Assembly: GCF_006345805.1 (NCBI RefSeq)
Contig: NC_043003.1
Coordinates: 36,890,001 to 36,954,000 of the forward strand
Direction of reading: 5' to 3'
Length of the DNA stretch: 64,000 bases
Source of the DNA: Octopus sinensis
Taxonomy: Eukaryota
In this document: piece after piece, positions 4,395-64,000 of the stretch
How the letters are laid out: each line of letters starts with the position of its first letter
How positions within the stretch are numbered: the stretch's first letter is position 1
Translations under genes and position numbers: made by a program
Notes under the pieces: generated by a model
Databases searched by the model: none
What the model was told of the DNA's origin: nothing
The model's input: the letters and a program-made list of their open reading frames with translations, nothing else

Positions 4395-4783
4395 ATAGGC
4401 ACAAGACCTAGAGTTTTGAGGTGGGAGCTAGTAGATTTTATCAATACCAGTGGTTGACCGATACTCATCCCGTCGACCCCGAAAGGGCGGAAAGCAATGT
4501 CAACCTTGCGGAATTTGAACTCAGAACATAAAAACAGACGAAATACCTATTTCCTTACTACCCACAAGGGGCTAAGCACAGAGGGTACAAACAAGGACAG
4601 ACAAACGGATTAAGTCGATTACATCGACCCCAGTGTGTAACTGGTACTTAATTTATCGATCTCAAAAGGATCAAAAGCAAAGTCGACCTCGACGGAATTT
4701 GAACTCAGAAAGTAACGGCAGGCGAAATACCGCTAAGCATTTTGCGCGGCGTGCTAACGATTCTGCTAGCTCGCCGCCTTCGC
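4395..4783 (-). mobile_element. SINE family A dimer (A1 monomer plus body with A2 tail)
   Basis: Head GGCGGCGAGCTAGCAGAA, B box GAGTTCAAATTCC; junction GAAATA|GGTATTTCG at 4547/4548. Confidence 0.8.
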
Positions 4784-30728: not shown

Positions 30729-30905
30729 AAGGCGGCAAGCTGACAGAATCGTTAGCACGCCGGTCGAAATGCCTAGCGGTATTTCGTCCGTTCTGAGTTC
30801 AAATTCCACCGAGATTGATTTTGCCTTTCATCCTTCGGAGTCGATTAAATAAGTACCAGTAACGCACTGGGTCGATGTAATCGACATAATTCCCATCCCC
30901 AATTT
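30729..30905 (+). mobile_element. SINE family A (A2 tail) within (ATT)n
   Basis: AAGGCGGCAAGCTGACAGAATCGTTAGC head through AATCGAC...CCCCAATTTT. Confidence 0.8.
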
Positions 30906-31278: not shown

Positions 31279-31504
31279 TATTTCTTTATTACCCACAAGG
31301 GGCTAAACATAGAGGGGACAAACAAGGACAGACATAGGTATTAAGTCGATTACATCGACCCCAGTGCGTAACTGGTACTTAATTTATCGACCCCGAAAAG
31401 AAGGAAAGGCAAAGTCGACCTCGGCGAAATTTGAACTCACAACGTAGCGACAGACAAAATACGGCTAAGCATTTGCCCGGCGTGCTAACGTTTCTGCCAG
31501 CTCG
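31279..31504 (-). mobile_element. SINE family A1 with 9-bp TSD
   Basis: ACCAGTACC at 31270-31278 and 31505-31513. Confidence 0.9.
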
Positions 31505-32450: not shown

Positions 32451-32455
<5 letters not shown>

Positions 32456-32697
32456 TCTTTACTACGCACAAGGGGCTAAACACAGAGGGGACAAACAAGG
32501 ACAGACAAACGGATTAAGTCGATTACATCGACCCCAGTGGGTAACTGGTACTTATTTAATCGACCCCGAAAGGATGAAAGGCAAAGTCAACCTCGGCGAA
32601 ATTTGAACTCAGGACGTAACGGCAGACGAAATACGGCTACGCATTTCGCCCGGTGTGCTAACGTTTCTGCCAGCTCATACACATATATATAGAGATA
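32451..32697 (-). mobile_element. SINE family A1 between (TA)n tracts
   Basis: Complete body plus A1 tail. Confidence 0.85.
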
Positions 32698-35482: not shown

Positions 35483-36572
35483 AAAGACGTTTGGCTCAGT
35501 GGTTAAAGAGTCGGGCTCACAATCATGAAGTTATGCGTTCGATTCCCGGAACGGTCTGTGTGTGTTGTGTTGTGTTGTGTCGTGTTGTGTTCCTGATCAA
35601 GATATTTTATTTCTACTTTGCTCCAGTTTACTCAGCTGTAGAAATGACCTGCAACATCACAGGTACTAAGCTGTATCGGCGTTGTTCTCACGATGAATAC
35701 AGAATTACCGTTTGATCGTAATTAAACCATCATTTTGGCTGCTATTTCTGAAGAAAAAAAGGCGGTGAGCTGGCAGAAACGTTAGCACGCCGTGCGAAAT
35801 GCGTAGCCGTATTTCGTCTGCCGTTACGTTCTGAGTTCAAATTCCGCCGAGGTCGACTTTGCCTCTCATCCTTTCGGGGTCGATTAAATAAGTACCAGTT
35901 ATGCACTGGGGTCGATATAATCGACTTAATCCGTTTGTCTGTCCTTGTTCGTCCCCTCTGTGTTTAGCCCCTTGTGGATAGTAAAGAAATAGGTATTTCG
36001 TCTGCCGTTACATTCTGAGTTCAAATTCCGCTGAAGTCGACTTTGCCTTTCATCCTTTCGGGGTCGATAAATTAAATACCTATTTCTTTATTACCCACAA
36101 GGGCTAAACATAGAGGGGACGAACAAGGCCAGACAAATGGATTAAGTCGATTATATCGACCCCAGTGCGTAACTGGTACTTATTCAATCGAACCCGAAAG
36201 GATGAAAGGCAAAGTCGACCTCGGCGGAATTTGAACTCATAACGTAGCGGCAGACGAAATACCGCTAAGCATTTCGCTTAATTTCGATAAATTAAATACC
36301 CGTAACGCGCTGGGGTGGATGTAATCGACTTAATCCCTTTGTCTGTCCTTGTTTGTACCCTCTATGCTTAGCCCCTAGTGGGCAATAAAATATTAAGCTC
36401 TATCGGCCTTTGCCTTTCCCTTGGATAAAATCGCTGGAGAGTGTGGGGCTGATATGCATGGGTGACTGCTGATCTTCCATAAACAACCTTGCCCGGACTT
36501 GTGCCTCGCGGGGTAACTTCCTTGGTGCAATCCCATGGTCATTCTTGACAGAAGGATGGGCTTTACTTTTAC
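35483..36572 (+). mobile_element. SINE family E interrupted by a SINE A cluster (5' half 35483-35680, 3' half 36395-36572)
   Basis: The halves match the two parts of 1195-1515 and overlap at AAGCT(G/C)TATCGGC. Confidence 0.65.
35760..36392. mobile_element. SINE A1 dimer (+) containing an antisense A1 insertion (36081-36283) with 17-bp TSD
   Basis: TCGATAAATTAAATACC at 36064-36080 and 36284-36300; dimer junction at 35991/35992. Confidence 0.85.
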
Positions 36573-39384: not shown

Positions 39385-40846
39385 AAACTTCTGGCAGATT
39401 CGTTGGCGCTTCGGGCAAAATATTTAGCAGTATTTCTTCTGTCTGTACGTTTGTTGCCCAAAATCCGCCAAGGTCAACTTTGCCATTCGGCCTTCGGGCT
39501 TGCACACTGGGAGCCCATGTAATTGACTTCTCTTCTGAAACGACTATACTTATACTATAGGGCAATGGATTAACAGAATCCATAGAGCATCGGACAAACT
39601 AGTATGACGTATTACTTTCGATTCTTACTGTCCATGATTTCAATTCCTACCATTGCTAAAGCTTTCTTTCATCCCTCCATTGTCGGTAAACAGAAATAAC
39701 AATCAAGTAATGGGGTCGATGGTGTCGACTAACCGTCTCTCCTATAAAATATTGGCCTTGTGCCTAAATTAGAAACAATTCTTAGTAGATTCGTGTTATG
39801 CAACCAATAATTTATAGGCAATAATGTCACTTTTAGAGGTGGTAACATCTCAGCTGTTTAAACTGTGAACATGAAAGTTTCAGAATCTGAGGTTAATAAC
39901 TAACGAAATATTTACAGAAAGCGTCTTGTTTGTTTGGAGTTTTAGCTTTTTGCTGTTTTTTTTTTGTTTTTGTTTTTTACTGTGGTGCCTTTTAGTCACT
40001 AATTTTATGTTAGAACCTGATTTGGTAATAAAATTATATATAAACCAAGTGTAAATGGACATATTCATTGAAGATCCAGGAACGTAAATATCGGATAATA
40101 ATTATTTTGCTGACAAACAATGAAGTGAATAACCGATTGAACTGACTAGATGTTTCTTTTATCAATAGCGGAAGGATGAAAGACGAAGTACGTTTATTAC
40201 TTTGTTACAATGTCATAAATGTAGTTTTACAGTTAGTTAGAGTTAAATGAATTTATTTATTTATTTACAGTATTCCTCGTCCCCATCTCTGAAACAAAGT
40301 TCGGAGTAGTTTTACAGTTAGTTTGAGTTCAGCAAATTTGATTACAGTACTACCCTTATTCATCTCTGAATATTGAAAAAAAGGTTTGCCGATGTAGTAT
40401 TAGAAATATTTACTAAAAATAAGGAAGAATGGTCAAGCTGGAATGCTCAGAGCTTCTTGAATCAGGCTTCGTGATCTGAGTCTAATCAACAACAGCATAG
40501 ATCACAAATAAATAATTATACAGGTATATTATTAAATACTTAGGCTCGCTGTGAAATTAAGATTCGCCAGGACAACTTTGGCAGTTTGAAATTACACGCG
40601 AATTGATTACTTAAACTATGTTTAATTTTTTTTAGTTTTGATAAATCGCAAATATTGATTTCAAATTTTGGTACAAGTATAGTAGTTTCAGAAGAGAATT
40701 CAATTACATGGGCTCCCAGTGTGCAACCCCGAAGGCCGAATGGTAAAGTTGACCTTGGCGGATTTTGGACAACAAACGTACAGACAGACGAAATGCTGCT
40801 AAATATTTTGCCCGAGGCGCTAACGAATCTGCCAGCTCGCCGTCTT
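39385..40846. repeat. Inverted pair of a SINE A variant (39385-39556 +, 40677-40846 -)
   Basis: Track ORFs 39371..39583(-) and 40655..40852(+) translate almost identically; the copies share non-consensus sequence. Confidence 0.8.
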
Positions 40847-40859
40847 ACATAGCCCACGA

Positions 40860-41045
40860 ATATTTTTTTCTACTCTAGGCACAATGTCCGAAATTGTTTG
40901 TGGAGGGGACCAGCCGATTAGATAGACCCAAGTATGCAACTGGCACTTAATTTATCGACCTCGAAAGGATGAAAGGCAAAGTCGACCTCGGCGGAATTTG
41001 AACTCAGAACATAAAGACAGACGAAATACTACTAAGCATTTCGCC
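40860..41045 (-). mobile_element. SINE family A (A2 tail)
   Basis: TAGGCACAA...TTTATCGACC...GGCGGAATTTGAACTCAGAAC. Confidence 0.7.
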
Positions 41046-42385: not shown

Positions 42386-42699
42386 AAATGTGCCATGAAG
42401 GCTTTACAAAGAGGGGACGAATAAAGACGAACACACAGCCACTCTTGCGCCTATTATATATATGTATTTCCGTCATCAACATTTTTTCTTTCCAACATCA
42501 TTTACTCGTTCCTTCTTTTTTCTTTTCCTTTTCAGCAGTAGTGTCGTTTTCCTTGTAAATTTTCTCTCCAGAAGTAGATTCGGCTTTTGATTAATGACGC
42601 GATGAAAATTAAAATCCTGATACAATTAAGTATTCCGCACTGTATAAATGTAGAGTTTGCGATCTATCATCCGATATTGGTTTGATCTGAATGAGACCG

Positions 42700-51025: not shown

Positions 51026-52212
51026 TTCGGTCATCCCATAAACTATGCGATTTTTTACTCAATTGCATAAGCTAAAATTCGGAGGGGGATGGGATAAACT
51101 GCCAGCATCAACTTGATATAAAAGCGGGTAGTTGTTTTACCTTGTCTTATTCTTAGTGCAAGTTTTGAAGAGTGAAATTCGATTTTAACAGTTATTTTTT
51201 TCAAAGCTAAAACGGAACTGACAAATGAGCATGTTCTGCATATTTTGCTTCGAGTTCAATAAAGGCAACAACACAAAAGAAAGTGCGTGGAATATTAATG
51301 CAGTGTCAACGGTGGTTCCAGAAATCCTGAACCGGAAACTACAACCTAGAAGACGAGCCTCGTCCTGGAAGAAATGAAGAGCTAGACGAGGACGTCCTGC
51401 AAATCCTGGTGGAAGCAAATCCCATCGTACCTGTTGAGGAACTAGCAGAGAAGCTTGGATTTGGTCATTTAATCATTCATTGACACCTGTGTGCCATCGG
51501 AAAAGTCAGCAAATTCGGTCACTGGATTCCTCACAAACTTTCTGAGTCTAATCGTATACAGAGAGTGAATGTGTGCTCTTCTTTGCTGTCACGTCTCACG
51601 AATAAACTGTTTTTGGACCGAATAGTGACTGGTGAGGAGAAATGGGTGCTCTATAAAAAAAATGTCAAGTGCCGAAGACAGTGGGTAGGGAACGGAGAAA
51701 TACCGGCACGCCAGGCTAAAGAAAGTTTTCACCCAGGTAAAGGTCTGTTTGGTGGGATATTAAAGGTTTAGCCAACTTTAAACCAAACAATAGCAAAGAC
51801 ACCGCTAGAAGAAAAACAACCATTTTTGGTTTCAAGACGAAAGGTGGTCTTCCATCAGGATAATTCTCGGCCACATAGAACAATGATGACATTCCAAAGG
51901 CTGGAGCAGTTTGAATGGGAATCGATGCCCCACCATCATATTCGCCGGTCATTGTCCCATGTGGTTATCATTTATTCCGCAGGCTTCAAAATTATTTGGA
52001 CAAAAAAATATAAATTCTGTAGACGTGGTCAGAACAGTACTGGAGGAGTATTTTTCGTCACGGACAAGTGAAGTTTGGTAGAGGGGCCTTGCAAGTCTAC
52101 TAGATAGATGGAAGAGCATTGTACAAAAGTGAAGGAGAGTATATTTTAGGTTTAAAAAGAACTTTGTTTATCTCAATTTTGATAAATATAAGAAGTGTTA
52201 AAAACCGCATAT
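51026..52212 (+). mobile_element. mariner transposon, near full length, decayed
   Basis: WIPHKL, RIVTGEEKWVLY, HQDNSRPH and YHLF motifs; partial TIR match (ATGCGATTTTTT vs AAAAACCGCAT). Confidence 0.85.
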
Positions 52213-52229
52213 ATATGTATATATATATA

Positions 52230-52282
<53 letters not shown>

Positions 52283-53405
52283 ATATATATACGTACATAT
52301 ATAAACTGTAATACGCTTTATTGCTAGTGAAATTTATGTTGGTATTTTGAATATTACACATTGTATAAACGTGAAACTCAGATCCTCGGCAGTGATCATT
52401 TCAATGGCAATGATAAGCTACATGCAAAGCTATATTGAGTTATGTATTTTGAAGTATTTCCAAATCTATTATGAAATGCCCCTAAAACGAAGTGTCTGAC
52501 AACAACAGAGAAGACGCGGCTTATCCCAAGAGAATTATCCAAAGAGTTTGGTCGAGATACAAGAACATTGAAGGCGTAAGTGGAAAACTCTTTCACCAAA
52601 GCAAGATAAAGGTACGAGAAGAAGTATATTCCAGCGTGACATCTGAAAAATAGGTAGACAAGTAAGAAAATACCTCATTAGCACAAGTGCTGCCATATTT
52701 GAAAGTCCTGGGGTTGCTCCTTTGTCCAGAAGCACCTGGTTTAGGATCCTTAAAGAGACGGCCAGAAGTGTTAAGTGCATCGCTAAACCCATCCTAAGCA
52801 AGATCCACAAAGAGAAGCGTATTCATTGGTCACAGAAGTACATGGAGATAAATTTCCAAGATGTCCTCTTCACGGATGAGGCCAGAGCTACTCTGGATGG
52901 CCCCGATTTATGGGCCAAAGCTTGGATATCTTTCGAAGCCTCTCACCCACATCGCATTCGGCGTCAACAACGTGGTGGCGGTGTCATGTTTTGGGCGGGT
53001 ATCATAGGAAATGAACTTGTCGGACCTTTCCAAGGAGCCAGAAGGTATCAAACTCACTAGCTGCGCTTCTACACCGCGTTTCTGGAGGTGCATTTTGCAG
53101 TATGGTTAGATGATTTGCCACTCTCCCGTCGACAGTGATTGATTTTTGTACATGACAATGATCCTTGGAATTCCGCCAGGGCTACATTTTCGTACCTTGT
53201 AACTTTGGGAATCGCAGACCAATCACTCGTGACTTGGTATCCCTGTTCTCCTGACCTAAACCCTATCGAACAGCTCTGGTCGATCTTAAAGAGGTAAGTG
53301 TATGAAGGAGTCATCCAGTTTTCATCGAAGGAGGCCCTGTGCGAAAACATCAAAACAGCTGCTGATAACATAACATGTTCTCAGATTAGTCGGCTAACAG
53401 TTTCT

Positions 53406-54343
53406 TATTTCTTTATTGCCCACAAGGGGCTAAACATAGAGGGGACAAACAAGGACAGATAAAGGGATTAAGTCGATTACAACGACCATAGTGCGTAACA
53501 GGTACTTAATTTGTCGAGCCCGAAAGGATGAAAAGCAAAGTCGACCTCGACGGAATTTGAACTCATAACGTAACGGCAGACGAAATACCTATTTCTTTAC
53601 TACCCACAAGGATTAAGTCGATTATATCGACCCCAGTGCGTAACTAGTACTTATTTTATCGACCCCGAAAGGATGTAAGGCAAAGTCAACCTCGACGGAA
53701 TTTGAATTCAGAACGTAGCGGCAGACGAAATACCGCTAAGCATTTCACTCGGCGTGCTAACGTTTCTACATGACATGCATAAGATCTGGTCATCAACTCT
53801 AAGTAGAGACTTCAAACTTGAAATCTTCAAAGCCACAGTCGAACAAATTCTGCTATATGGCTCAGAAACCTGGACATTATCAAAGAAGATTGAGAGGCGG
53901 TTGGATGGAACCTACACTCGCCTCCTTATGAGAGCTCAAAATCTCTCGTGGAAGCGTCATCCAACCAAAATGCAAATATATGGGAAACTACCACTTGTGT
54001 CATCTCTTGTGAAAGGTAGGAGAGTCCAGTTTGCTGGACATTGTTGTAGAGCTGAAAAAGAGGTAATTTCTACTCTTCTCCTCTGGAAGCCATCTACTCG
54101 CAATACCAAAGAGCGCACACTCTCCTACCCTGATGTAATCTCCAGGGATACAGGCATCCAGCAACAGGACCTCCGTAATGCCATAATGGACCGTGAAGTC
54201 TGCCGTAGCATGGTAAATTCCATTGTCTCGACCACGGTTGAACAATGATGATGATGAAGGTTTCTACCAGCTCGCCGCCTGAGATAGGAGCGAAGGGAAA
54301 TCGTCAAGACATCAGTCGATCCACAAGATCATCATCCTCCTTT
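53406..54343 (-). mobile_element. SINE A1 dimer with a 63-nt 5' extension and 19-bp TSD
   Basis: TAGTCGGCTAACAGTTTCT at 53387-53405 and 54344-54362; dimer junction at 53589/53590. Confidence 0.9.
53770..54259 (+). mobile_element. RTE-clade LINE 3' fragment with 8-bp TSD
   Basis: ILLYGSETW, RRLDGTYTRLL, FAGHC motifs; (TGA)n tail overlapping the stop; GTTTCTAC at 53762-53769 and 54260-54267. Confidence 0.9.
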
Positions 54344-56379: not shown

Positions 56380-56861
56380 GCACAACAGCTTCCACAAGGA
56401 CATGTGTTATGTATATGTGTACTATAGATAGGTATATAGATAGATAGATAGATAGATATGTTTCTTTATTAGCCACACAGGGCTGCACACAGATAGAACA
56501 AATTACAAGGTAGAGCTTTTCTTTTGAAGGTATTAAAAAAAAAAAAAAAAAAAAAGGAACGGGGAGGTTCGATCAAAAGGGATCGTAAAAGGAGAGAAAG
56601 AGGACAAAAATAAGGGGGGTAAAAAAAAAAAAAAAAAAAAAGGGGGGGAGAGGAAAAAAAATGATCAATAGGGATCGTTATCACAGAAATGTCAATATGA
56701 AGTGTAAAGGGGAGGACAGGTGAGGTTTACCCGTGAGAAGAAAAGCCTGCGGAAAAGACCACGGTAACCTCGGTCAATGAAGTCACATTTTATATTTCTT
56801 TTTTTTTTTTTTTTTTTTTTTTTTTTGCAAATAAGCAACTCTCTGTTTTCGATTTCTGGGT

Positions 56862-59800
56862 TCATAGGACTATGCTCAAGGTGGCTTCGTCATTCATACG
56901 TGCCATTCTTGCTACATTCACCCATCTTTTTTTAAAACATTCGCTAGACAAAACTTGCCTCTCTACTCTCACTTTCCTTTTCAAGTGGTACTTGAAGAAG
57001 TTGATGAGAGATTGACCAGAGAGGAAAGTGTTTGTCTCCAATCCTTTCAGACGCGTCCACCAGATACATTCTTTCGCCATAGCCACAAGGATGATGAAAA
57101 TAGCTCTTCCTTCCCGTTTGAAGGAAGGAGGCGTGACAATATTGACGATAGACTCAGCTGATAAACCGACTCGTCCCACACGTGACAGCAGTTGTTCGAC
57201 ATAAGCCCACAGGTCGGAAATTGTTGGACACTGAACGAGTGCGTGCAGAACGGTTTCGTCGCTCTGACCGCATCTCGGGCAGGTCGGCCCCGTGTTTCTC
57301 GAGCCGTGTCTGTAGAGCTTATCCCGAACGGGTAGCGCTTCTCGGTAGCACTGCCAGGCCAGGGATCTCTGGAAGTTGTCCATGGGCCCTGGCCCGAAAG
57401 TCGTCCCGAACAGGCGGGTCAGGTACTCCTCGTCGACGTCCAGGTTCGCCCCGAGCTCGTCGTCGTACCTCCCCTCCACTAAACCCCTATAGAATGCTTT
57501 GGTTGTGTTGAAGTCACTTAAGGTCGACCCAGGACGGCAGAGTTGCTTGAGAGCAACGCGACACTCGCGGTGCCATTCGCCCTTCCTCGGCCTCTTTTTA
57601 ATCCACGACTGCAGTTCGGTCATGGAGACGAGCTGCGGGAAAGCGTGCCTCACAACGGCGACCACACCTGTTCACCGTCGTCTACATAGAGCCAGAGATG
57701 TCGCAGTCTCAGCGCGTGTCTGCGCATCATCAACCACGGCATCCCAGCCCTCCTTTTAACGGGTGTTGACAGCAAATGGATCGCCTGACCATCGGGACGC
57801 ATCCTTTCCACAAGAAGCGAAAGAGGATGCGTTGTAGTTTGGTGATGGTAGGGTCGGGACAAGGTACGACGGTCAGGCGGTAGTAGATGACGGACGCGAT
57901 GTACGTGTTCGCCACCTCCGCTCGACCTTTTAGGGACAGTTTCCTCTCGGCCCATTGCCGGGCGAGAGTGACCACCCTACTCGTTATCTCGTTCCAGTTC
58001 TTCTCCACTTGGAGGTCCGGACCAAACCAGACCCCGAGCAACTCAACCGGGCCGTCGGTCCAGCGTCCCACGACGGAGGCGCTGGTGGACGGCATGGGCT
58101 TGCTTCTCCAGGTGCCTAGTCGCAAGCCCACTGACTTTTCCCGGTTGATTTTCGCTCCTGTCACCGCTTCGTAGTTTTTCAGTGTCTCGCCGACCAGCTC
58201 GATGTGCTCGTGGCTAGACACTATGACGGTGACGTCGTCCGCGTATGCAGACACGCTCGTCCCGCATCCCAATTCTCGCGGGATGCCCCTTAGAGTCGCC
58301 AGCTTCCGCAGTAGTGGCTCAAGAGTCAATACGTATAGAAGCGCCGAGAGGGGGCATCCCTGACGGACCGAACGTGCAATGTCGAAAGGTCTCGATAGAT
58401 GTCCATTTACGCGAATTACCGAACGGATGCCTCTGTACAAGGCAGCTATCCAGCCGCGGAAGACGGGACCGAAACCAGCCGCTCTCAGGACTGCCTCCAA
58501 GTATCGATGGTCTACCCTATCAAAGGCTTTTGATTGATCCAAGTTGATCAGGGCCCCACCCATGCCAGGTTCGTTAACTACCCTGTCTATGATGTAGCGC
58601 ATCAGATGGAGGTTGTCATGGATGGTCCGGCCTGGCACGGCGCATGTTTGCGCCTTGTCGACCAGTTTCTCGATGACAAGCGCCAACCTCTTGGCTAGCA
58701 CCTTGGCCAAAATTTTCAAGTCTGCATTAAGCAGAGTGATGGGCCTAAAGTTATCTATTACATTTCCCTTGTTTAGATCTTTCTTCAGCAGTGTTACGGC
58801 TCCTCGGCTCACAAAACCAGGAATGCTCCTGTTTTGCTGCCAGTTGCAGTACACCGCCGCCAAGAGATCTCCAAACAAGTCTGGCATACAATTGTAAAGC
58901 TCGTAGGGTAGACCATCCAAACCCGGTGATTTGTCCCTCGAGCATTCTGCCATCGCTTCCCGCACTTCCGCCGCCGTGATGGCACCTTCGCAGCACCCTG
59001 CCTTTCTTGTCGAGAGTCGTGGTAGGCTATGTAGGTAGGCACTGAAGTCCACCCTACGTTCTTGCCCTCCACTCGTTCCGAACAGTCGGGCAAAATGCTG
59101 CTGAAAGGCCTCACACATTTTACTTGGCTCGAGCAATTCGCGCCCCTGTTCATCTACCAGTGACCGAATGGTGGCTTTGTTGCCCTGTTGCGCCTCTGCC
59201 ACCCGGGCCTCTCTCGCGGCTCCAACACCTTCGTTCCTTAGAGCACGCATCCTAGCTCTGACAGCACATCCTTCGTGTTTGGCGTTGAAGTGTTGGTCGA
59301 GGGCCAACCTCGCCGCCAAAACGTCGGATGCGATGCCGCTTCTAATTGCCTCTTCTAGCTTCTTAACTAGCTCACCCTCTACTCTATTTCTATCTATGGC
59401 TAGTGCTTTGCTGTACCTAATCGCTTCTGCTTTTACTGCTCTCTTGAGGGCAAACCACCATTTGTTGTTGATGATGGCTCCCGTCAAAGCCCTCTTTACT
59501 AGTGTGCTAATCCGGTCTCTGAAAACTTGTCTCGATGGGAAAGACGCGTTTAGTTTCCAGTATCCGGGACCCTGCCTAAGTGTCTTACCTAAGTCTAGCG
59601 TACATGTCACAAGTTTGTGATCCGTGTAGCTGACTATGTGGAATTGTGGACATCCTATGCTATCTCTATCTACTGTCCTACACAGTATCCTATCTAGATA
59701 CGATCTCGACGACCCGATGCGGTTGCTCCATGTCCACGTTGGCGCATTCGGTGGTCTAGTCGAAACCTGTCAGACAGTTGAAAGCGTCTGAGCAGGTCTC

Positions 59801-60296
59801 TGAGGCATTTGCATCCCCGTCTATTCCTATCTCTACCCACGTAGTCTACATGCGTGTCCAAGGTAGCATTCCAATCCCCCACTAAGAGTAAAGGACGAGA
59901 CGTTCCCAAGAAAACTTCTAGACGTTGAAAGAAATCCGCCCGACCTGTTAAGGGCGGTGCGTAAACTGATACGAGCCGAAAAGCGCACCCATTGCTGCCG
60001 TCGACATCCAGGACGACCAGTCTACCCTCCGGGTCTACGAATATTGTCCTTACATTGAGATCCAGACTCTTGTGAAAAAGTACCGCGGTGCCACTACCGC
60101 CCATTCTCGGCAGACAGGGGGAAAAATAAATGTTGAACTGTCCGCCAAACATGGTCTTTAGGGCCCGCGGATTGTGGAGTCTGGTCTCGCTTATGGCTAT
60201 GATTTCTAACTTATGTGACTTTATGTCATTTAAGAGGTACCCTTGTTTCCAAGGGGACCCCAAGCCACGCGCATTTACACAACCAATCTTGATCAT
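56862..60296 (-). CDS. Tx1 ORF2: APE endonuclease, reverse transcriptase and C-terminal zinc finger (3 single-base frameshifts)
   Basis: NARGL, ISET, GDWN, YLDR, TDHKLV, YWKLN, KSPGLDG, FRPITLLNAD, DQSKAFDRV, QGCPLS, YADD, CPRCGQSDETVLHALVQC. Confidence 0.9.
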
Positions 60297-60327: not shown

Positions 60328-62328
60328 TTACTGCTCGAAAGTTTTTGCTTTCTCCTCCGTTGGTTTGTCCTCGAGAAGATCCCAGTACAGTTTCTTTGTG
60401 AGATATTTTTGGCATTTACCAACCGCACTGGGGAAAATGCCTTTGAGTGTGTGGTGCAGACTTTTGGAGATGTGTATTATTTTGATGTGGTCTGGTGGTG
60501 TTGTGTATGGGTGGTTGTTTGTTTTTATGTCATCTTCTGTTATGTTTGTTTTTGATTGGATGTATTCCATCAAATTGTGTTTTTGGTGTCTATGGCTGTG
60601 AGCATGTTTGCTGTATATGTTTTTGTGGTGTTGGTGTGGCTGTTGTTTGCGTTGGGTTTTGAAATGTCTTCGGGAGATGTATTTCCCCCTGCTTTGTTCG
60701 TGTTTGCATTTGGTTTGGTTGTGTTTCTGCTCTTTATTTTCCTTCTTTTTGTAGCTATTTGCCATTCCTCACTGGTTTCGTCTTCCGACGAAATTTCTGA
60801 GGAATCAGAAGGGGGTAGGGGTATGTTGTGGGCTTCTATGTATGTCTGTGTAAGTGGTTGTGTTGTTGTTTTCGTTGTTGTTGGTTGTTGAGTGTTTGTG
60901 TGTGTTGAGTGCGGTATAAGGGATGGGGGATCAGTTTGTGTGTGTTTTCTTTGTTTTTCTGTTCCTTGGGTTTTGCTGTTGATGGTAGTGTTGGTATTTT
61001 TCCAGGTGTCGAGTGGTTTTTGGTTGATGACGGATTAGCTTGGTGTGCTTCTCTTGTCGTCTTCTGTGTTGATGGTGGTGTGGGTAGTAGAGCTTTTTTT
61101 CCGGAGTGCTTTGGTTGTGGTAGTGGTTGTTGTTGTTGCTCTTGGTGTGCAGTGGTTGGGCACGTCTTTTTCAAGTGTGTTTCGCTTCCACACAAATAGC
61201 AGCGTGGTCGCCTGCCCTCTACCACTATATAGAGTTTGTAGCCTCCTGGCAGTTCTATAGCGGTGGGTATCTTCTCTCTTGCTGCTTCATCCAATTGAAG
61301 CAGGAATTCGATTGATTTGCCCACATAGTCTTTCTCTCCTAGAACCGCGATTTCCAGGATGTTTGTCTCTGACATTGTCTCTGACATTTCAAAGCAGATG
61401 GCAGAGACCACCCATTGTGTTTCGACATCAAATGGTATGTTTTTTATTTGGACTTTCGTGACCCTTTTGTTTAAATAGACTGGTATCATTACCAAGTCGT
61501 CCGAATGTAGCTCCAATGTGGAAAAACGTTTTGCTAAACTTTCGTTGAGGAAACGTACTTGGACTGTACCAAATTTGTTTCCCCAACTGATATATTCCTT
61601 GGAGTCCCATACAGGACGAAGGCATTTATCGATTTTTTCCTGCGGTGCATTTTCTGTTCTTCTTGTTTTTTGTTTATTACTTTATAAATTATTGTTTTTT
61701 TTTGCGTGTTTTCCACGATGTGTTGTGGAATATGAAGGTGCAATTTGTCTCCTTCTTTGGAGAAGAGTGCCTTTGTGCGGTTTATCTCTTGTGTGGTGAA
61801 TGTTACAATTGTTCTTTTTTGTTTTGTTACGTCCGCAAAATTCGTTTTGAATTTGGCAGTAGAAGTGTTAATTGTGGCAGTGTTAATTGAAGTCATGGTA
61901 GTGGTGTTGGTGTTGGCGGTATTAGCAGCAGAAGGCTTGGATGTAGCATTTGACGTCGTAGTAGTGGTGTTGGTGTTGGCGGTGTTGTCTTTGGTAGGCG
62001 GCTTTGTGCCAATTTCGTTGTTGTTGTTGTTGGTGGTGATGGTGGTGGTGCTGGCATTCATGTTTTCGTTTGTATTCATTTTTGAAATCCCTTTCTCTGT
62101 CCCTTTATCATCAACAAGTGGTGTGGGGAGTGAGGGAAAATCTAAGTTAATGTCTTTGGTCGCGGCGATGGTGAATGCGACGTTAGATTTGTTGTTGTTG
62201 TTGTTGGTGGTGGTGATGGTGGTGACAGCGGTGTTCACGCTGCGATGTTTAGCAGCTAGTGGTAGCAATAGTGTTTTGCTACCGTTCTGCATGACTGGCG
62301 GGCTAGCCACGTGGTTTCTAGTTGCCAT
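60328..62328 (-). CDS. Tx1 ORF1 (gag-like RNA-binding protein), about 3 frameshifts
   Basis: ATG at 62328; Thr/Asn-rich N-terminus with internal duplications; [14 protein letters not shown] (CX2CX4HX4C); [11 protein letters not shown]; stop at 60328, 31 nt before the ORF2 ATG. Confidence 0.8.
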
Positions 62329-62547
62329 TTTCAAAATGAAAAATGGCTAAAAAACCCACGAAAGTTTTGAAAGTTTTTTTTGTAATTTCGCCCATACAGG
62401 GGCGGAATTCTACGTGAATAATTCTCAGGTTTTTTAGTGAATGAATTTGCACAACGATTAAAACAAAATATTTGACAACAAGGAGTTTTAAACATGTAAA
62501 AGTGGCCAACTTACTTGGAGCCGATATGACTAGCGTCCGTCCATTGT

Positions 62548-62560
62548 GATAGAGATAGAT

Positions 62561-62603
<43 letters not shown>

Positions 62604-62604
62604 T

Positions 62605-62652
<48 letters not shown>

Positions 62653-62661
62653 GTAGGTAGG

Positions 62662-62718
<57 letters not shown>

Positions 62719-62730
62719 GATAGATAGATA
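62548..62730. repeat. (GATA)n microsatellite at the Tx1 5' junction
   Basis: Direct reading. Confidence 0.95.
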
Positions 62731-63512
62731 GCCTTAAATGCAAATAATTTTGAACTGTACCTTATCGCTGAATGGTTTGTTTGTTCATTATGCGCTTTCG
62801 GATTCACGATCCTTCTTGTTCGTGCACGTATCTATGTTTATGCCTCATGTTGGTAGAGAACACATCTTGGAATTATTATTGTTCTTGTTCTGAGAAGCAA
62901 CTGTTACGTTTCAGGCTCACGGACAGTCCAATGATGTTTCGTATGTACCTTAGTGCATAGTCAATCCAATTCTATTTTATAAGGTTGTTAATTAATGACC
63001 CTTGATTTAACCATCTATCTGTCTATCTACCAGATTATTTTTCTGCCTTTTTATTAGTATATCTATCTATCTTTCTAACTTTCTATAGTTGAACCTTTCC
63101 ATCCGTTTCTCTACTTTAAAAATGCGGTTAAGCATTGAAACCACTAACAATAACTAAACTCTTATTTTTCATTGCCTGTCACTCTGTTCTGTTATATGAC
63201 ACTTAAAAGCACTTAACTTCAAAAAAGTTATATCCATATTTTAACCGTGTTGCTTGAGATACGCCGACGTATCAAAAGTGAAATAAACTTCGGAGATGCT
63301 TTACCATATGCATAAACTGCAGAAGTATAGCAACCTCTTCTTTTGGATCCATCACGATGTCAGATATTCTTCCATGTCATCAGCAAGTATCTCGAGATCA
63401 CAAACGTTGTTCCCTTTGGCCTGTACGCTTCGCCTGAGTAGGGCAGCGAGGACTGAATTAGGCTTCGTCTGCGGAAGGATTCCACTTGCAGTCTCTTCTC
63501 AGCGACACTTAC

Positions 63513-63759: not shown

Positions 63760-64000
63760 GGGCACAAGGCCAGAATTTTCGGGGCAGGAGTTAAGTCGAT
63801 TACATCGATCCCATTGATGGAGTAGTACTTATCTTATCGACCCCGAAAAATAAAAGGCAAAATCGACCTCGGCGGAATTTGAACTCAGAACGTAAAGACA
63901 GACGAAATACCGATAAACATTTAAGTTTTAGCACAAGACCAGAATTTTCAAGGGAGGAGTTAAGTCGATTACATCGATTCCATTGATGAACTAGTAATTA
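63760..64000 (-). mobile_element. SINE A (A2 tail) tandem unit, ~168-bp period (runs off the window end)
   Basis: GCACAAG(G/A)CCAGAATTTTC...GGAGTTAAGTCGATTACATCGAT at ~63762 and ~63930. Confidence 0.75.

What the first reader, a model, noticed from the sequence alone, without database searches (positions are those of the whole stretch)
56459..56510. The most abundant SINE (A1) shares its 3' end with the Tx1 LINE
Tx1 end: CCTTGTAATTTGTTCTATCTGTGTGCAGCCCTGTGTGGCTAATAAAGAAACA. SINE A1 end (53406 copy): CCTTGT---TTGTCCCCTCTATGTTTAGCCCCTTGTGGGCAATAAAGAAATA. My manual count is 38 of 49 aligned positions, co-terminal and including AATAAAGAAA. Shared 3' tails are the established signature of SINE/LINE pairs, but L1-group partners usually act through poly(A). 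A sequence-specific tail shared with a Tx1 element would be unusual and would identify the likely engine of a very abundant SINE. The imperfect match and different target suggest a sister Tx1 family.
Basis: partly seen in the sequence, partly recalled or inferred. Interest (0 to 1): 0.8.

Follow-up and report, generated by a model that had tools for sequence, protein, structure and literature searches.

The report
Octopus SINE shares LINE's tail
The last ~50 bases of a broken L1/Tx1-like LINE in this octopus window are the true, conserved end of that LINE lineage, and the window's commonest SINE carries the same end, so this lineage probably copies the SINE; this is a new example of a well-known kind of partnership.

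Summary
The reverse complement of 56459-56510 aligns with the 3' end of the SINE copy at 53406 at 38 of 49 positions. It is co-terminal, and its score (25) lies far above 5000 shuffles and 9176 genomic 52-mers (maximum 19 in both).

The segment is not a stray SINE remnant. It ends a ~6.1-kb, frameshifted L1-superfamily LINE on the minus strand (ORF1 with a CCHC knuckle, then APE endonuclease, RT and zf-RVT) that sits inside a (TATC)n microsatellite. The closest relative found (81% aa) has no upstream A-run, and its 3' UTR runs on into the segment. Seven further LINE 3' ends from Argonauta hians and other samples of unknown species finish with the same module, ...GCCCTTGTGGCYAATAAAGAAAT. An eighth carries the core motif with a different end.

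Two of these tails are closer to the SINE than the window copy is (Argonauta, 44 of 53 columns). Other short elements in Argonauta, including a tRNA-like SINE, carry the same tail. SINE and LINE copies end at the same nucleotide with no poly(A).

Not shown: Tx1 membership by RT phylogeny, the exact partner family, and the proposed 3' stem-loop, whose support is weak. I found no published octopus SINE/LINE tail pair. Verdict: a new member of a known kind.

The parts
56459..56510 (-). 3'-terminal ~50-nt tail module of the LINE, shared with SINE A1: ...CCTTGTAATTTGTTCTATCTGTGTGCAGCCCTGTGTGGCTAATAAAGAAACA
   Evidence: 38/49 identity to the A1 tail, score far above controls; aligned with 7 other LINE tails and 13 SINE or short-element tails
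56463..56493 (-). Predicted 3' hairpin within the tail: UCU.UGU..AGCC[CUGUGU]GGCU.AUA.AGA, followed by 4 unpaired nt (tentative)
   Evidence: same architecture predicted in most tails, but z-score only -0.7 here; 86.5% of cells paired against ~50% in slid controls; one pair seen as GC:6, CG:4, AU:1
56511..56861 (-). Rest of the LINE 3' UTR, with an internal A28 run, two T21 runs and a ~90-nt internal duplication
   Evidence: collinear with the L001 3' UTR beyond the A-run
56862..57665 (-). ORF2 C-terminal piece with the zf-RVT zinc-binding motif (reading frame differs from the RT piece)
   Evidence: Pfam PF13966 E=2.7e-8; frames
57730..59610 (-). ORF2 reverse transcriptase piece
   Evidence: Pfam PF00078 E=4e-31; best solved-structure match is human L1 ORF2p at 6e-40, against R2 at 2e-19
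59694..60296 (-). ORF2 APE-type endonuclease piece
   Evidence: Pfam PF03372 E=1.4e-11
60836..61516 (-). ORF1-like reading frame with a CCHC zinc knuckle ([14 protein letters not shown])
   Evidence: translation; no Pfam hit at E<=0.01; collinear by tblastx with the Argonauta copies
61534..62334 (-). Low-complexity N/T-rich upstream reading frame of the LINE
   Evidence: a comparable low-complexity region lies upstream of ORF1 in Argonauta L004
62335..62547 (-). Probable 5' UTR; the LINE 5' end is at about 62545, next to the microsatellite
   Evidence: the exact boundary is inferred
62548..62731 (-). (TATC)n microsatellite flanking the LINE 5' end (read on the minus strand)
56423..56458 (-). 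(TATC)n microsatellite flanking the LINE 3' end, in the same orientation; the likely insertion target
53406..53590 (-).
35761..35991 (+). Full-length SINE A1 copy (231 nt), from GGCGGTGAGCTGGCAG... to ...AAAGAAATA
4548..4778 (-). Full-length SINE A1 copy (231 nt), preceded by (ATT)n
36081..36263 (-). 5'-truncated SINE A1 copy with a 17-bp target-site duplication, GGTATTTAATTTATCGA, that fixes the exact 3' end (no poly(A))
31279..31503 (-). SINE A1 copy with target-site duplication GGTACTGGT
32452..32676 (-). SINE A1 copy lying in an (AT)n tract

Best explanation
Window 56459-56510 (minus strand) is the genuine 3' terminus of a ~6.1-kb, now defective L1-superfamily LINE. It is probably of the Tx1 group and is inserted in a (TATC)n microsatellite. 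The last ~50 nt form a module conserved across this octopod LINE lineage: a pyrimidine-rich stretch, the motif GCCCTTGTGGC, then TAATAAAGAAAT. The ~231-nt SINE A1 carries the same module at its own 3' end, and so do other short retroposed elements in Argonauta, at least one of them a tRNA-like SINE.

Inferred mechanism: the ORF2 protein of a LINE of this lineage recognises the tail on the SINE transcript, perhaps as a small hairpin whose loop is CUUGU. It nicks the target with its APE endonuclease and starts reverse transcription exactly at ...GAAAU(A/C). Copies are therefore made without a poly(A) tail (the 'stringent' type of SINE/LINE partnership).

The window copy is not the driver. It is frameshifted, matches the SINE tail at only 78%, and sits in a different kind of target. 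The driver should be a sister family whose tail is closer to GCCCCTTGTGGGYAATAAAGAAATA.

Shown: the similarity, that the tail belongs to the LINE, its conservation across LINE copies, its presence on several kinds of short element, the shared exact end, and the absence of poly(A). Inferred: recognition in trans, the hairpin, and Tx1 membership.
For: 1. Similarity. 38/49 identity, co-terminal, score 25 against a maximum of 19 in 5000 shuffles and in 9176 genomic 52-mers. It is the best non-SINE match in the window.

2. The tail belongs to the LINE.
- ORF1(CCHC), APE, RT and zf-RVT lie collinear on the minus strand immediately upstream.
- The 3' UTR of L001 (81% aa) has no A-run and continues into the segment.
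- LINE copies L004 and L010 (Argonauta hians, near full length by tblastx), L011, L013 and L005, plus UTR-only fragments L004b and L010b, end in the same module; L003 has the core motif with a divergent end.
- L004, L004b, L011 and L013 share LINE-specific sequence just upstream of the module (TGTAAACC.../...TGTATCGTCC) that SINE A1 lacks.

3. Sister tails fit A1 better. L004 gives 44/53 columns, and L013 has GTGGGTAATAAAGAA as A1 does.

4. Several kinds of short element use the tail. These are A1 in this window (10 tails), a ~150-nt element in Argonauta with a tRNA-like head (sub-threshold Rfam tRNA hits on all three tandem copies), and further short elements. The two Argonauta loci hold 25 tails in 24.8 kb.

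5. Exact shared end and no poly(A). Target-site duplications of 17 and 9 bp start directly after ...GAAATA. LINE tails are followed directly by (TATC)n or (ATT)n.

6. Target preference, as expected of Tx1-type elements. The window LINE has (TATC)n on both sides. L004, L004b and L011 sit in (ATT)n. Five of nine A1 3' junctions are followed by GGTAYT.

7. Hairpin. The same three-part stem is predicted in most tails. 86.5% of cells pair, against ~50% when partners are slid, and one stem position occurs as G-C, C-G and A-U. The stem arms seen (AGCC/GGCT, GGCC/GGCC, GACC/GGTC, AACC/GGTT, GCCC/GGGC, ACTC/GGGT) show compensating changes.

8. L1 group. The RT matches human L1 ORF2p at 6e-40 and R2 at 2e-19. 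Published counts of recently active O. vulgaris LINE families list L1-Tx1 and no other L1-type class (PMC13282606). Type I RRM/CCHC ORF1 proteins in non-mammalian animals are described as consistent with Tx1 (PMC5203782).
Against: - No LINE from the window's own species with a near-identical A1-type tail was recovered, so the actual partner is not in hand.
- The closest copy (L001) is cut by its contig end 24 nt into the segment.
- The species behind L001, L003, L005, L011 and L013 are unknown.
- The hairpin is thermodynamically unremarkable: single-sequence z-scores run from -2.6 to +1.2, and RNAalifold on the MAFFT alignment kept only 2 pairs.
- The covariation counts come from related sequences and from a structure derived from those same sequences.
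- ARAGORN and Rfam do not recognise a tRNA in the A1 head, so its Pol III origin rests on box-like motifs read by eye.
- Tx1 membership was not tested by phylogeny.
- A cuttlefish relative (48% RT identity) has no such tail within 13 kb, so the module may be confined to octopods.
- Three of the five GGTAYT junctions are the same SINE-in-SINE context and may not be independent events.
Confidence: 0.75

Rival explanations
1. The 52 nt are a 5'-truncated, diverged SINE copy that happened to insert at the end of the LINE. The LINE itself would end at the upstream A-run (window 56798-56827).
For: An A28 run lies about 35 nt after the ORF2 stop. SINE copies are dense in the window and often nested.
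Against: L001, the closest LINE copy, lacks the A-run and is collinear with the window's 3' UTR on both sides of it and into the segment. LINE copies from other sources carry the same module at the end of their own, otherwise diverged, 3' UTRs, with LINE-specific sequence directly upstream that the SINE lacks. No SINE body precedes the segment, and no target-site duplication surrounds it.
Confidence: 0.04
2. The direction is the reverse, or there is a third source. The LINE lineage captured the tail from an abundant SINE (or both took it from another element), and A1 is mobilised by some other LINE.
For: Template switching can move tails in either direction. No LINE with an exact A1-type tail was found. 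Octopus genomes also hold active RTE, CR1 and Dong-R4 LINEs (PMC13282606).
Against: The module is present on LINE lineages that differ by 40-50% in ORF2 amino acids and come from at least two octopod genera, which points to long residence on the LINE. Short elements with different bodies, one with a distinct tRNA-like head, carry it, which is what repeated capture from a LINE would produce. Even if the direction were reversed, a shared functional tail still implies use of the same enzyme.
Confidence: 0.12
3. The resemblance is chance plus a shared polyadenylation-signal-like AATAAA, with no functional link.
For: Ten of the 38 identical positions lie in AATAAAGAAA. The sequences are pyrimidine- and T-rich, which inflates matches.
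Against: The score is about 11 sd above dinucleotide shuffles and above every genomic 52-mer tested. The similarity extends about 50 nt upstream of AATAAA. The same module recurs on 21 aligned LINE and short-element tails.
Confidence: 0.02
4. A LINE of this lineage copies the SINE, but recognition is not of an RNA hairpin. Priming would rest on base-pairing between the nicked AT-rich or microsatellite target and the A/U-rich 3' end or read-through sequence, with the conserved tail serving another role such as 3' processing or transcript stability.
For: The hairpin's thermodynamic support is weak. LINE copies sit in (ATT)n and (TATC)n, and the tail ends in A/T-rich sequence. Other target-specific LINEs are known to use read-through target sequence (my knowledge of R1/R2-type elements, not tested here).
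Against: A1 copies insert at GGTAYT and other non-repeat sites yet still end at the same nucleotide. Compensating changes in the upper stem are hard to explain without pairing.
Confidence: 0.15

Closest known systems
UnaL2 / UnaSINE1 of the eel (stringent-type SINE/LINE pair; Kajikawa & Okada 2002, as cited in PMC4494074 and PMC4824008)
   Same: SINE and LINE share a conserved 3' tail; a 3' stem-loop is proposed as the recognition element; reverse transcription starts at a defined end rather than on poly(A).
   Different: UnaL2 belongs to the L2 clade and ends in short tandem repeats. The element here belongs to the L1 group, ends in AATAAAGAAAT, and its hairpin is untested and only weakly supported.
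Tail-sharing L1-clade pairs in plants and algae: LINE1-1_ZM with maize/sorghum SINEs, and L1-1_CR with SINEX-3_CR (Ohshima 2012, PMC3472496)
   Same: An L1-clade LINE shares a specific 3' end, with a stem-loop in the maize/sorghum case, with a SINE. This shows that the L1 clade is not limited to poly(A) recognition.
   Different: Those are plant and algal lineages. The Chlamydomonas pair ends in poly(A) repeats and most plant L1-clade LINEs carry 3' poly(A). The octopod elements have no A-tail and are animal, Tx1-like and linked to microsatellite targets.
SINEU / Tx1-Mar of crocodilians (Kojima 2015, PMC4494074)
   Same: A Tx1-group LINE is proposed as the driver of a SINE, and target preference is shared between them.
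   Different: That pairing rests on a shared target (Mariner-N4_AMi) and shared snRNA-derived 5' heads, not on a shared 3' tail. Here the shared feature is the 3' tail.
Kibi and Koshi, Tx1-clade LINEs specific for (TC)n and (TTC)n microsatellites (Kojima & Fujiwara 2004, as cited in PMC4494074)
   Same: L1-group LINEs with an APE endonuclease found inside particular microsatellites. Here these are (TATC)n for the window copy and (ATT)n for three relatives.
   Different: Different repeat units and hosts (teleost fish). The cited source mentions no SINE partner for them. Target specificity here rests on four insertions only.
Human L1 / Alu (relaxed, poly(A)-dependent mobilisation)
   Same: An L1-group ORF2 protein (APE + RT) copies a Pol III-type SINE in trans. 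The RT here is most similar to human L1 ORF2p among solved structures.
   Different: There is no poly(A) on the SINE or the LINE; a specific shared tail takes its place. ORF1 is of the CCHC type, not the Transposase_22 type.

Membership tests
SINE/LINE pair with a common 3' tail (stringent type) | Significant, co-terminal sequence similarity between the SINE and LINE 3' ends | tested here: met
   38/49 identity; score 25 against a maximum of 19 in shuffles and in genomic background; ends fixed by target-site duplications and microsatellite junctions
SINE/LINE pair with a common 3' tail (stringent type) | The tail is an integral, conserved part of the LINE and not an inserted SINE fragment | tested here: met
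   L001 is collinear through the UTR into the segment; L004, L010, L011, L013, L005, L004b and L010b end in the same module and L003 has the core motif
SINE/LINE pair with a common 3' tail (stringent type) | Copies end at the tail without a poly(A) tract and are flanked by target-site duplications | tested here: met
   Target-site duplications of 17 and 9 bp start directly after ...GAAATA; there is no A-run after any of the 8 complete A1 tails
SINE/LINE pair with a common 3' tail (stringent type) | The short element is a true SINE with a Pol III (tRNA-type) promoter head | tested here: inconclusive
   ARAGORN and Rfam find no tRNA in A1; only box-like motifs are visible (GAGTTCAAATTCC, box B-like). 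The Argonauta SINE heads give sub-threshold tRNA hits of 18-22 bits, E 0.04-0.45, at all three copies
SINE/LINE pair with a common 3' tail (stringent type) | A conserved 3' stem-loop that serves as the recognition element | tested here: inconclusive
   Common architecture; 86.5% paired against ~50% slid, and some compensating changes. But z-scores run from -2.6 to +1.2 and RNAalifold keeps only 2 pairs
SINE/LINE pair with a common 3' tail (stringent type) | The LINE protein mobilises the SINE in trans, dependent on the tail | not testable with these tools
   Needs a retrotransposition assay
Tx1 group of L1-superfamily LINEs | ORF2 with an APE endonuclease, an L1-type RT and a C-terminal Cys/His motif | tested here: met
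   PF03372, PF00078 and PF13966; best solved-structure match is human L1 ORF2p at 6e-40
Tx1 group of L1-superfamily LINEs | RT-domain phylogeny places the element with Tx1 references rather than with L1 proper | not testable with these tools
   No Tx1 reference sequence could be reached: hits are unnamed and no supplement is held. The only indirect support is that the published tally of recently active O. vulgaris LINE families lists L1-Tx1 as its only L1-type class (PMC13282606)
Tx1 group of L1-superfamily LINEs | Target-specific insertion | tested here: inconclusive
   The window copy has (TATC)n on both sides; L004, L004b and L011 are in (ATT)n; L010 is in AT-rich repeats. The pattern is suggestive, but only 4-5 insertions were seen
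Tx1 group of L1-superfamily LINEs | Type I ORF1 protein (RRM plus CCHC knuckle) rather than Transposase_22 | tested here: inconclusive
   The CCHC motif [14 protein letters not shown] is visible in the translation, but there is no Pfam hit for zf-CCHC or RRM at E<=0.01

The most novel reading that the evidence does not exclude
One octopod lineage of Tx1-like L1-group LINEs uses sequence- or structure-specific recognition of a ~50-nt 3' module ending in AAUAAAGAAAU, with no poly(A). It would be the common engine behind several independently formed SINE families in Octopus and Argonauta, and so behind much of the octopod-specific SINE expansion. It would also pass its endonuclease's target preferences (microsatellites, GGTAYT) on to those SINEs. 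This would be the first animal L1/Tx1-group LINE documented to share a specific tail with its SINEs.
Probability: 0.45. Interest if true: 0.7.

Novelty: new member of a known kind. Interest (0 to 1): 0.5.

Why it matters
SINEs make up about 8-12% of Octopus genomes, and their expansion is specific to octopuses (PMC13282606, PMC8967140). The searchable literature lists most of them as unclassified and names no LINE partner. A tail shared with a defined LINE lineage gives a concrete candidate for the enzyme that built this fraction of the genome. It also gives a simple marker, the motif GCCCTTGTGGSYAATAAAGAAAT, for annotating related SINE families across octopods. Finally, it adds an animal example to the few L1-group LINEs that appear to recognise a specific 3' end instead of poly(A). 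That bears on how relaxed, poly(A)-based recognition evolved in mammalian L1.

Tried and rejected
- **Metagenome scan.** The gapped pattern TGTAAACCYCN{20,50}CCTTGTGG was too loose.
- **Other collections.** The search for related loci with a C-terminal ORF2 alignment found no relatives in bacterial/archaeal genomes or in viral contigs.
- **Protein searches.** They gave few close relatives and almost no names, so no Tx1 reference could be obtained for an RT tree. The supplement of PMC4494074 is not held.
- **Look-ups that added nothing.** P0004 is not on record. L002, L009 and L012 have too little 3' flank to reach a tail.
- **RNAalifold on the MAFFT tail alignment.** It kept only the two innermost pairs, because 1-nt register shifts between families misalign the arms. 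I scored a hand-written structure instead.
- **tRNA detection.** ARAGORN and Rfam, at both gathering and E<=1 thresholds, find no tRNA in the A1 head.
- **Global MAFFT alignment of the window and L001 UTRs.** It misplaced the truncated 3' end, so I used a local alignment.
- **Literature searches.** They found no octopus SINE/LINE tail pair and no Tx1/SINE tail pair. Albertin 2015 is not held.
- **Rejected readings.** The upstream A28 run as the LINE's end, chance similarity, and a SINE remnant (see the rival explanations).

Full report
**What is at the coordinates**

The window is cephalopod-like, AT-rich DNA full of repeats. On the minus strand, 56459-56510 reads CCTTGTAATTTGTTCTATCTGTGTGCAGCCCTGTGTGGCTAATAAAGAAACA and is followed directly by (TATC)n. 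Upstream on the same strand lie these reading frames:

| Window coordinates | Content | Support |
|---|---|---|
| 61516-60836 | ORF1-like frame with a CCHC knuckle ([14 protein letters not shown]) | translation, |
| 60296-59694 | APE endonuclease | PF03372 |
| 59610-57730 | reverse transcriptase | PF00078, E=4e-31 |
| 57665-56862 | zf-RVT C-terminus | PF13966 |

The three ORF2 pieces are in different frames, so this copy has at least two frameshifts and is dead. Among solved structures the RT is closest to human L1 ORF2p (6e-40), with R2 at 2e-19. The element therefore belongs to the L1 group. Its 5' side abuts about 180 bp of (TATC)n in the same orientation as the 3' flank. The ~6.1-kb element thus sits inside a (TATC)n microsatellite.

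- Against the consensus of six A1 tails the local score is 25. 5000 dinucleotide shuffles give 7.8 +/- 1.6 (maximum 19), and 9176 genomic 52-mers reach at most 19.
- Scanning the whole window with the A1 tail, the LINE end is the best hit outside SINE copies.
- A1 is a ~231-nt element running from GGCGGCGAGCTGGCAGAAACG... to ...CCCCTTGTGGGYARTAAAGAAATA. The window holds 8 complete and 2 degenerate tails.
- Target-site duplications of 17 bp (GGTATTTAATTTATCGA) and 9 bp (GGTACTGGT) begin immediately after ...GAAATA. The SINE therefore ends there without poly(A).

**Does the segment belong to the LINE?**

I fetched relatives of the ORF2 C-terminus and RT from public assemblies.

- The closest relative, L001 (81% aa), has ordinary sequence where the window has the A-run. 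It shares the block ATTGACYGAGGTTAACCGTGGTCTTTT...CACGGKTAAACCTC downstream of that point. It then aligns on to window 56487, 24 nt into the segment, where its contig ends.
- More distant LINE copies end their otherwise diverged 3' UTRs with the same module:
  - Argonauta hians L004: ...GTATCGTCCCCTCTATGTTTTTGCCCTTGTGGCTAATAAAAGAAATA, followed by (ATT)n.
  - Argonauta L010: ...GTCAGCCAGGTGGCTAAGAAAGAAAT, plus a UTR-only copy ending ...CGGCCCTTGTGGCTAATAAAGAAATC.
  - L011: ...GGGCCCTTGTGGCCAATAAAAGAAATC, followed by (ATT)n.
  - L013: ...GTATCGTCCCCTTTTATGTTTAACTCCTAGTGGGTAATAAAGAATTC.
  - L005: ...TTTAACCCTTGTGGTTTGAATAAA (contig end).
  - L003...GTCCTCTTGTGGCCAATCAA....
- L004 and L010 are near-full-length copies collinear with the window LINE.
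- Several of these tails share LINE-specific sequence just upstream of the module that A1 lacks.

The segment is therefore the LINE's own conserved terminus. The A-run is an internal peculiarity of this one copy.

**Which LINE fits the SINE best?**

The window copy gives 38 of 50 columns. The Argonauta L004 tail gives 44 of 53. L013 shares A1's GGGTAAT. No copy with an exact A1-type tail from the window's own species was recovered.

**Other elements use the tail**

The two Argonauta loci (24.8 kb) contain 25 copies of the motif. Among them are three head-to-tail copies of a ~150-nt element. Its head has canonical tRNA boxes (AGCTCAATTGGTAGAGCG, GGTTCAATCCC) and sub-threshold Rfam tRNA hits at all three copies. 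There are also elements with an A1-like body and other short elements. A cuttlefish relative (48% RT identity) shows no such tail within 13 kb.

**Targets**

- The window LINE lies in (TATC)n. L004, its neighbouring fragment L004b, and L011 lie in (ATT)n.
- Five of nine A1 3' junctions are followed by GGTAYT. Two of these have target-site duplications. The other three fall at the sequence GGTATTTCG inside another SINE, which produces tandem pairs.
- This is the behaviour expected of target-selective APE endonucleases, as in the Tx1 group (Kibi and Koshi in microsatellites, as described in PMC4494074). The sample is small.

**Structure**

Most tails fold into the same three-part hairpin, UCU.UGUU..NNCC[CUUGU]GGNN-AAUA.AGA, followed by 3-4 free nucleotides. 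On an 18-sequence alignment, 86.5% of cells pair, against about 50% when partners are slid. One position occurs as G-C (6), C-G (4) and A-U (1). The arm pairs AGCC/GGCT, GGCC/GGCC, GACC/GGTC, AACC/GGTT, GCCC/GGGC and ACTC/GGGT show compensating changes.

Against this, single-sequence z-scores are weak (-2.6 to +1.2). RNAalifold on the raw alignment keeps only two pairs. The sequences are related, and the structure was derived from them. I treat the hairpin as a hypothesis.

**Mechanism**

Shown:
- A shared, conserved, co-terminal tail that belongs to the LINE.
- Several kinds of short element bearing it.
- No poly(A).
- Target-site duplications.

Inferred:
- ORF2p of a member of this lineage binds the tail on SINE RNA.
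- It nicks the target and starts reverse transcription at ...GAAAU(A/C). This is the stringent mode established for UnaL2/UnaSINE1 and proposed for some plant and algal L1-clade LINEs (PMC3472496).
- The tail contains AAUAAA, yet integrated copies carry no A-tail. Initiation must therefore occur at a defined internal site of any polyadenylated or read-through transcript.

**What is known**

- Shared-tail SINE/LINE pairs are a classic finding: 58 pairs were listed by 2012 (PMC3472496, PMC3747384).
- L1-clade examples were reported only from maize/sorghum and Chlamydomonas in those surveys.
- Tx1-driven SINEs (SINEU) were inferred from shared targets and heads, not from tails (PMC4494074).
- Octopus repeat papers report 13 recently active L1-Tx1 families and abundant, mostly unclassified SINEs, but name no partner (PMC13282606, PMC8967140).
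- My searches found no report of this pair. Repbase annotations could not be checked.

**Verdict**

It is a new member of a known kind, with some added interest because the LINE is from the L1/Tx1 group and the SINE fraction concerned is large. Open points are Tx1 placement by phylogeny, the exact partner family, and experimental proof of tail-dependent mobilisation.

Noticed in passing
window 4472-4778, 35761-36084, 53406-53734: Three tandem SINE pairs. An A1 tail (...GAAATA) is followed directly by GGTATTTCG..., the internal part of a second A1-like unit that lacks its head. With the target-site duplications GGTATTTAATTTATCGA and GGTACTGGT at two other copies, this suggests insertion at ...|GGTAYT, a motif the SINE itself contains, possibly with homology-guided 5' joining.
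   Followed up: partly
window 30731-30893 (+), 40814-41029 (-), 63791-63914 (-): SINE copies with the A1-type head and body but different 3' ends. The first ends CCCATCCCCAATTTTAC plus (ATT)n and lies inside an (ATT)n tract. These may be subfamilies carrying tails from other LINEs.
   Followed up: no
window 56511-56861 (-): The 3' UTR of this LINE copy carries an A28 run, two T21 runs and a ~90-nt internal duplication (GATCCCTATTGATC... and GATCCCTTTTGATC...). The closest relative, L001, has none of the homopolymer runs.
   Followed up: partly
window 51826-53300 (+): Reading-frame pieces that look like a Tc1/mariner transposase (e.g. VFHQDNSRPH and SPDLNPIEQLW read by eye), followed directly by the A1 SINEs at 53406-53734.
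   Followed up: no
window 53754-54248 (+): A 164-aa reading frame (…ILLYGSETWTLSKK…) that resembles the C-terminal part of the RT protein of another non-LTR element.
   Followed up: no
L004 900-1357; L004 and L010 overall: Argonauta hians DNA is saturated with the tail motif: 25 copies in 24.8 kb. They include three head-to-tail copies of a ~150-nt tRNA-like SINE placed between an (ATT)n tract and the 5' end of a full-length LINE.
   Followed up: partly
P0004 (NCBI protein named for a Herbaspirillum sp. MAG); L001, L003, L011, L012 (metagenome assemblies): Octopod-type LINE ORF2 fragments turn up in metagenome assemblies, and one is deposited as a bacterial MAG protein. This looks like host DNA contamination.
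   Followed up: no
L134 (Acanthosepion pharaonis, 13.3 kb): A cuttlefish relative of the LINE (48% RT identity, zf-RVT present) shows no copy of the octopod tail motif within 13 kb, so the module may be octopod-specific.
   Followed up: partly
window 42391-42450 (-): A weaker tail-like stretch (TTCGTCCCCTCTTTGTAAAGCC, score 17 against the A1 tail). It could be a degraded or different tail.
   Followed up: no
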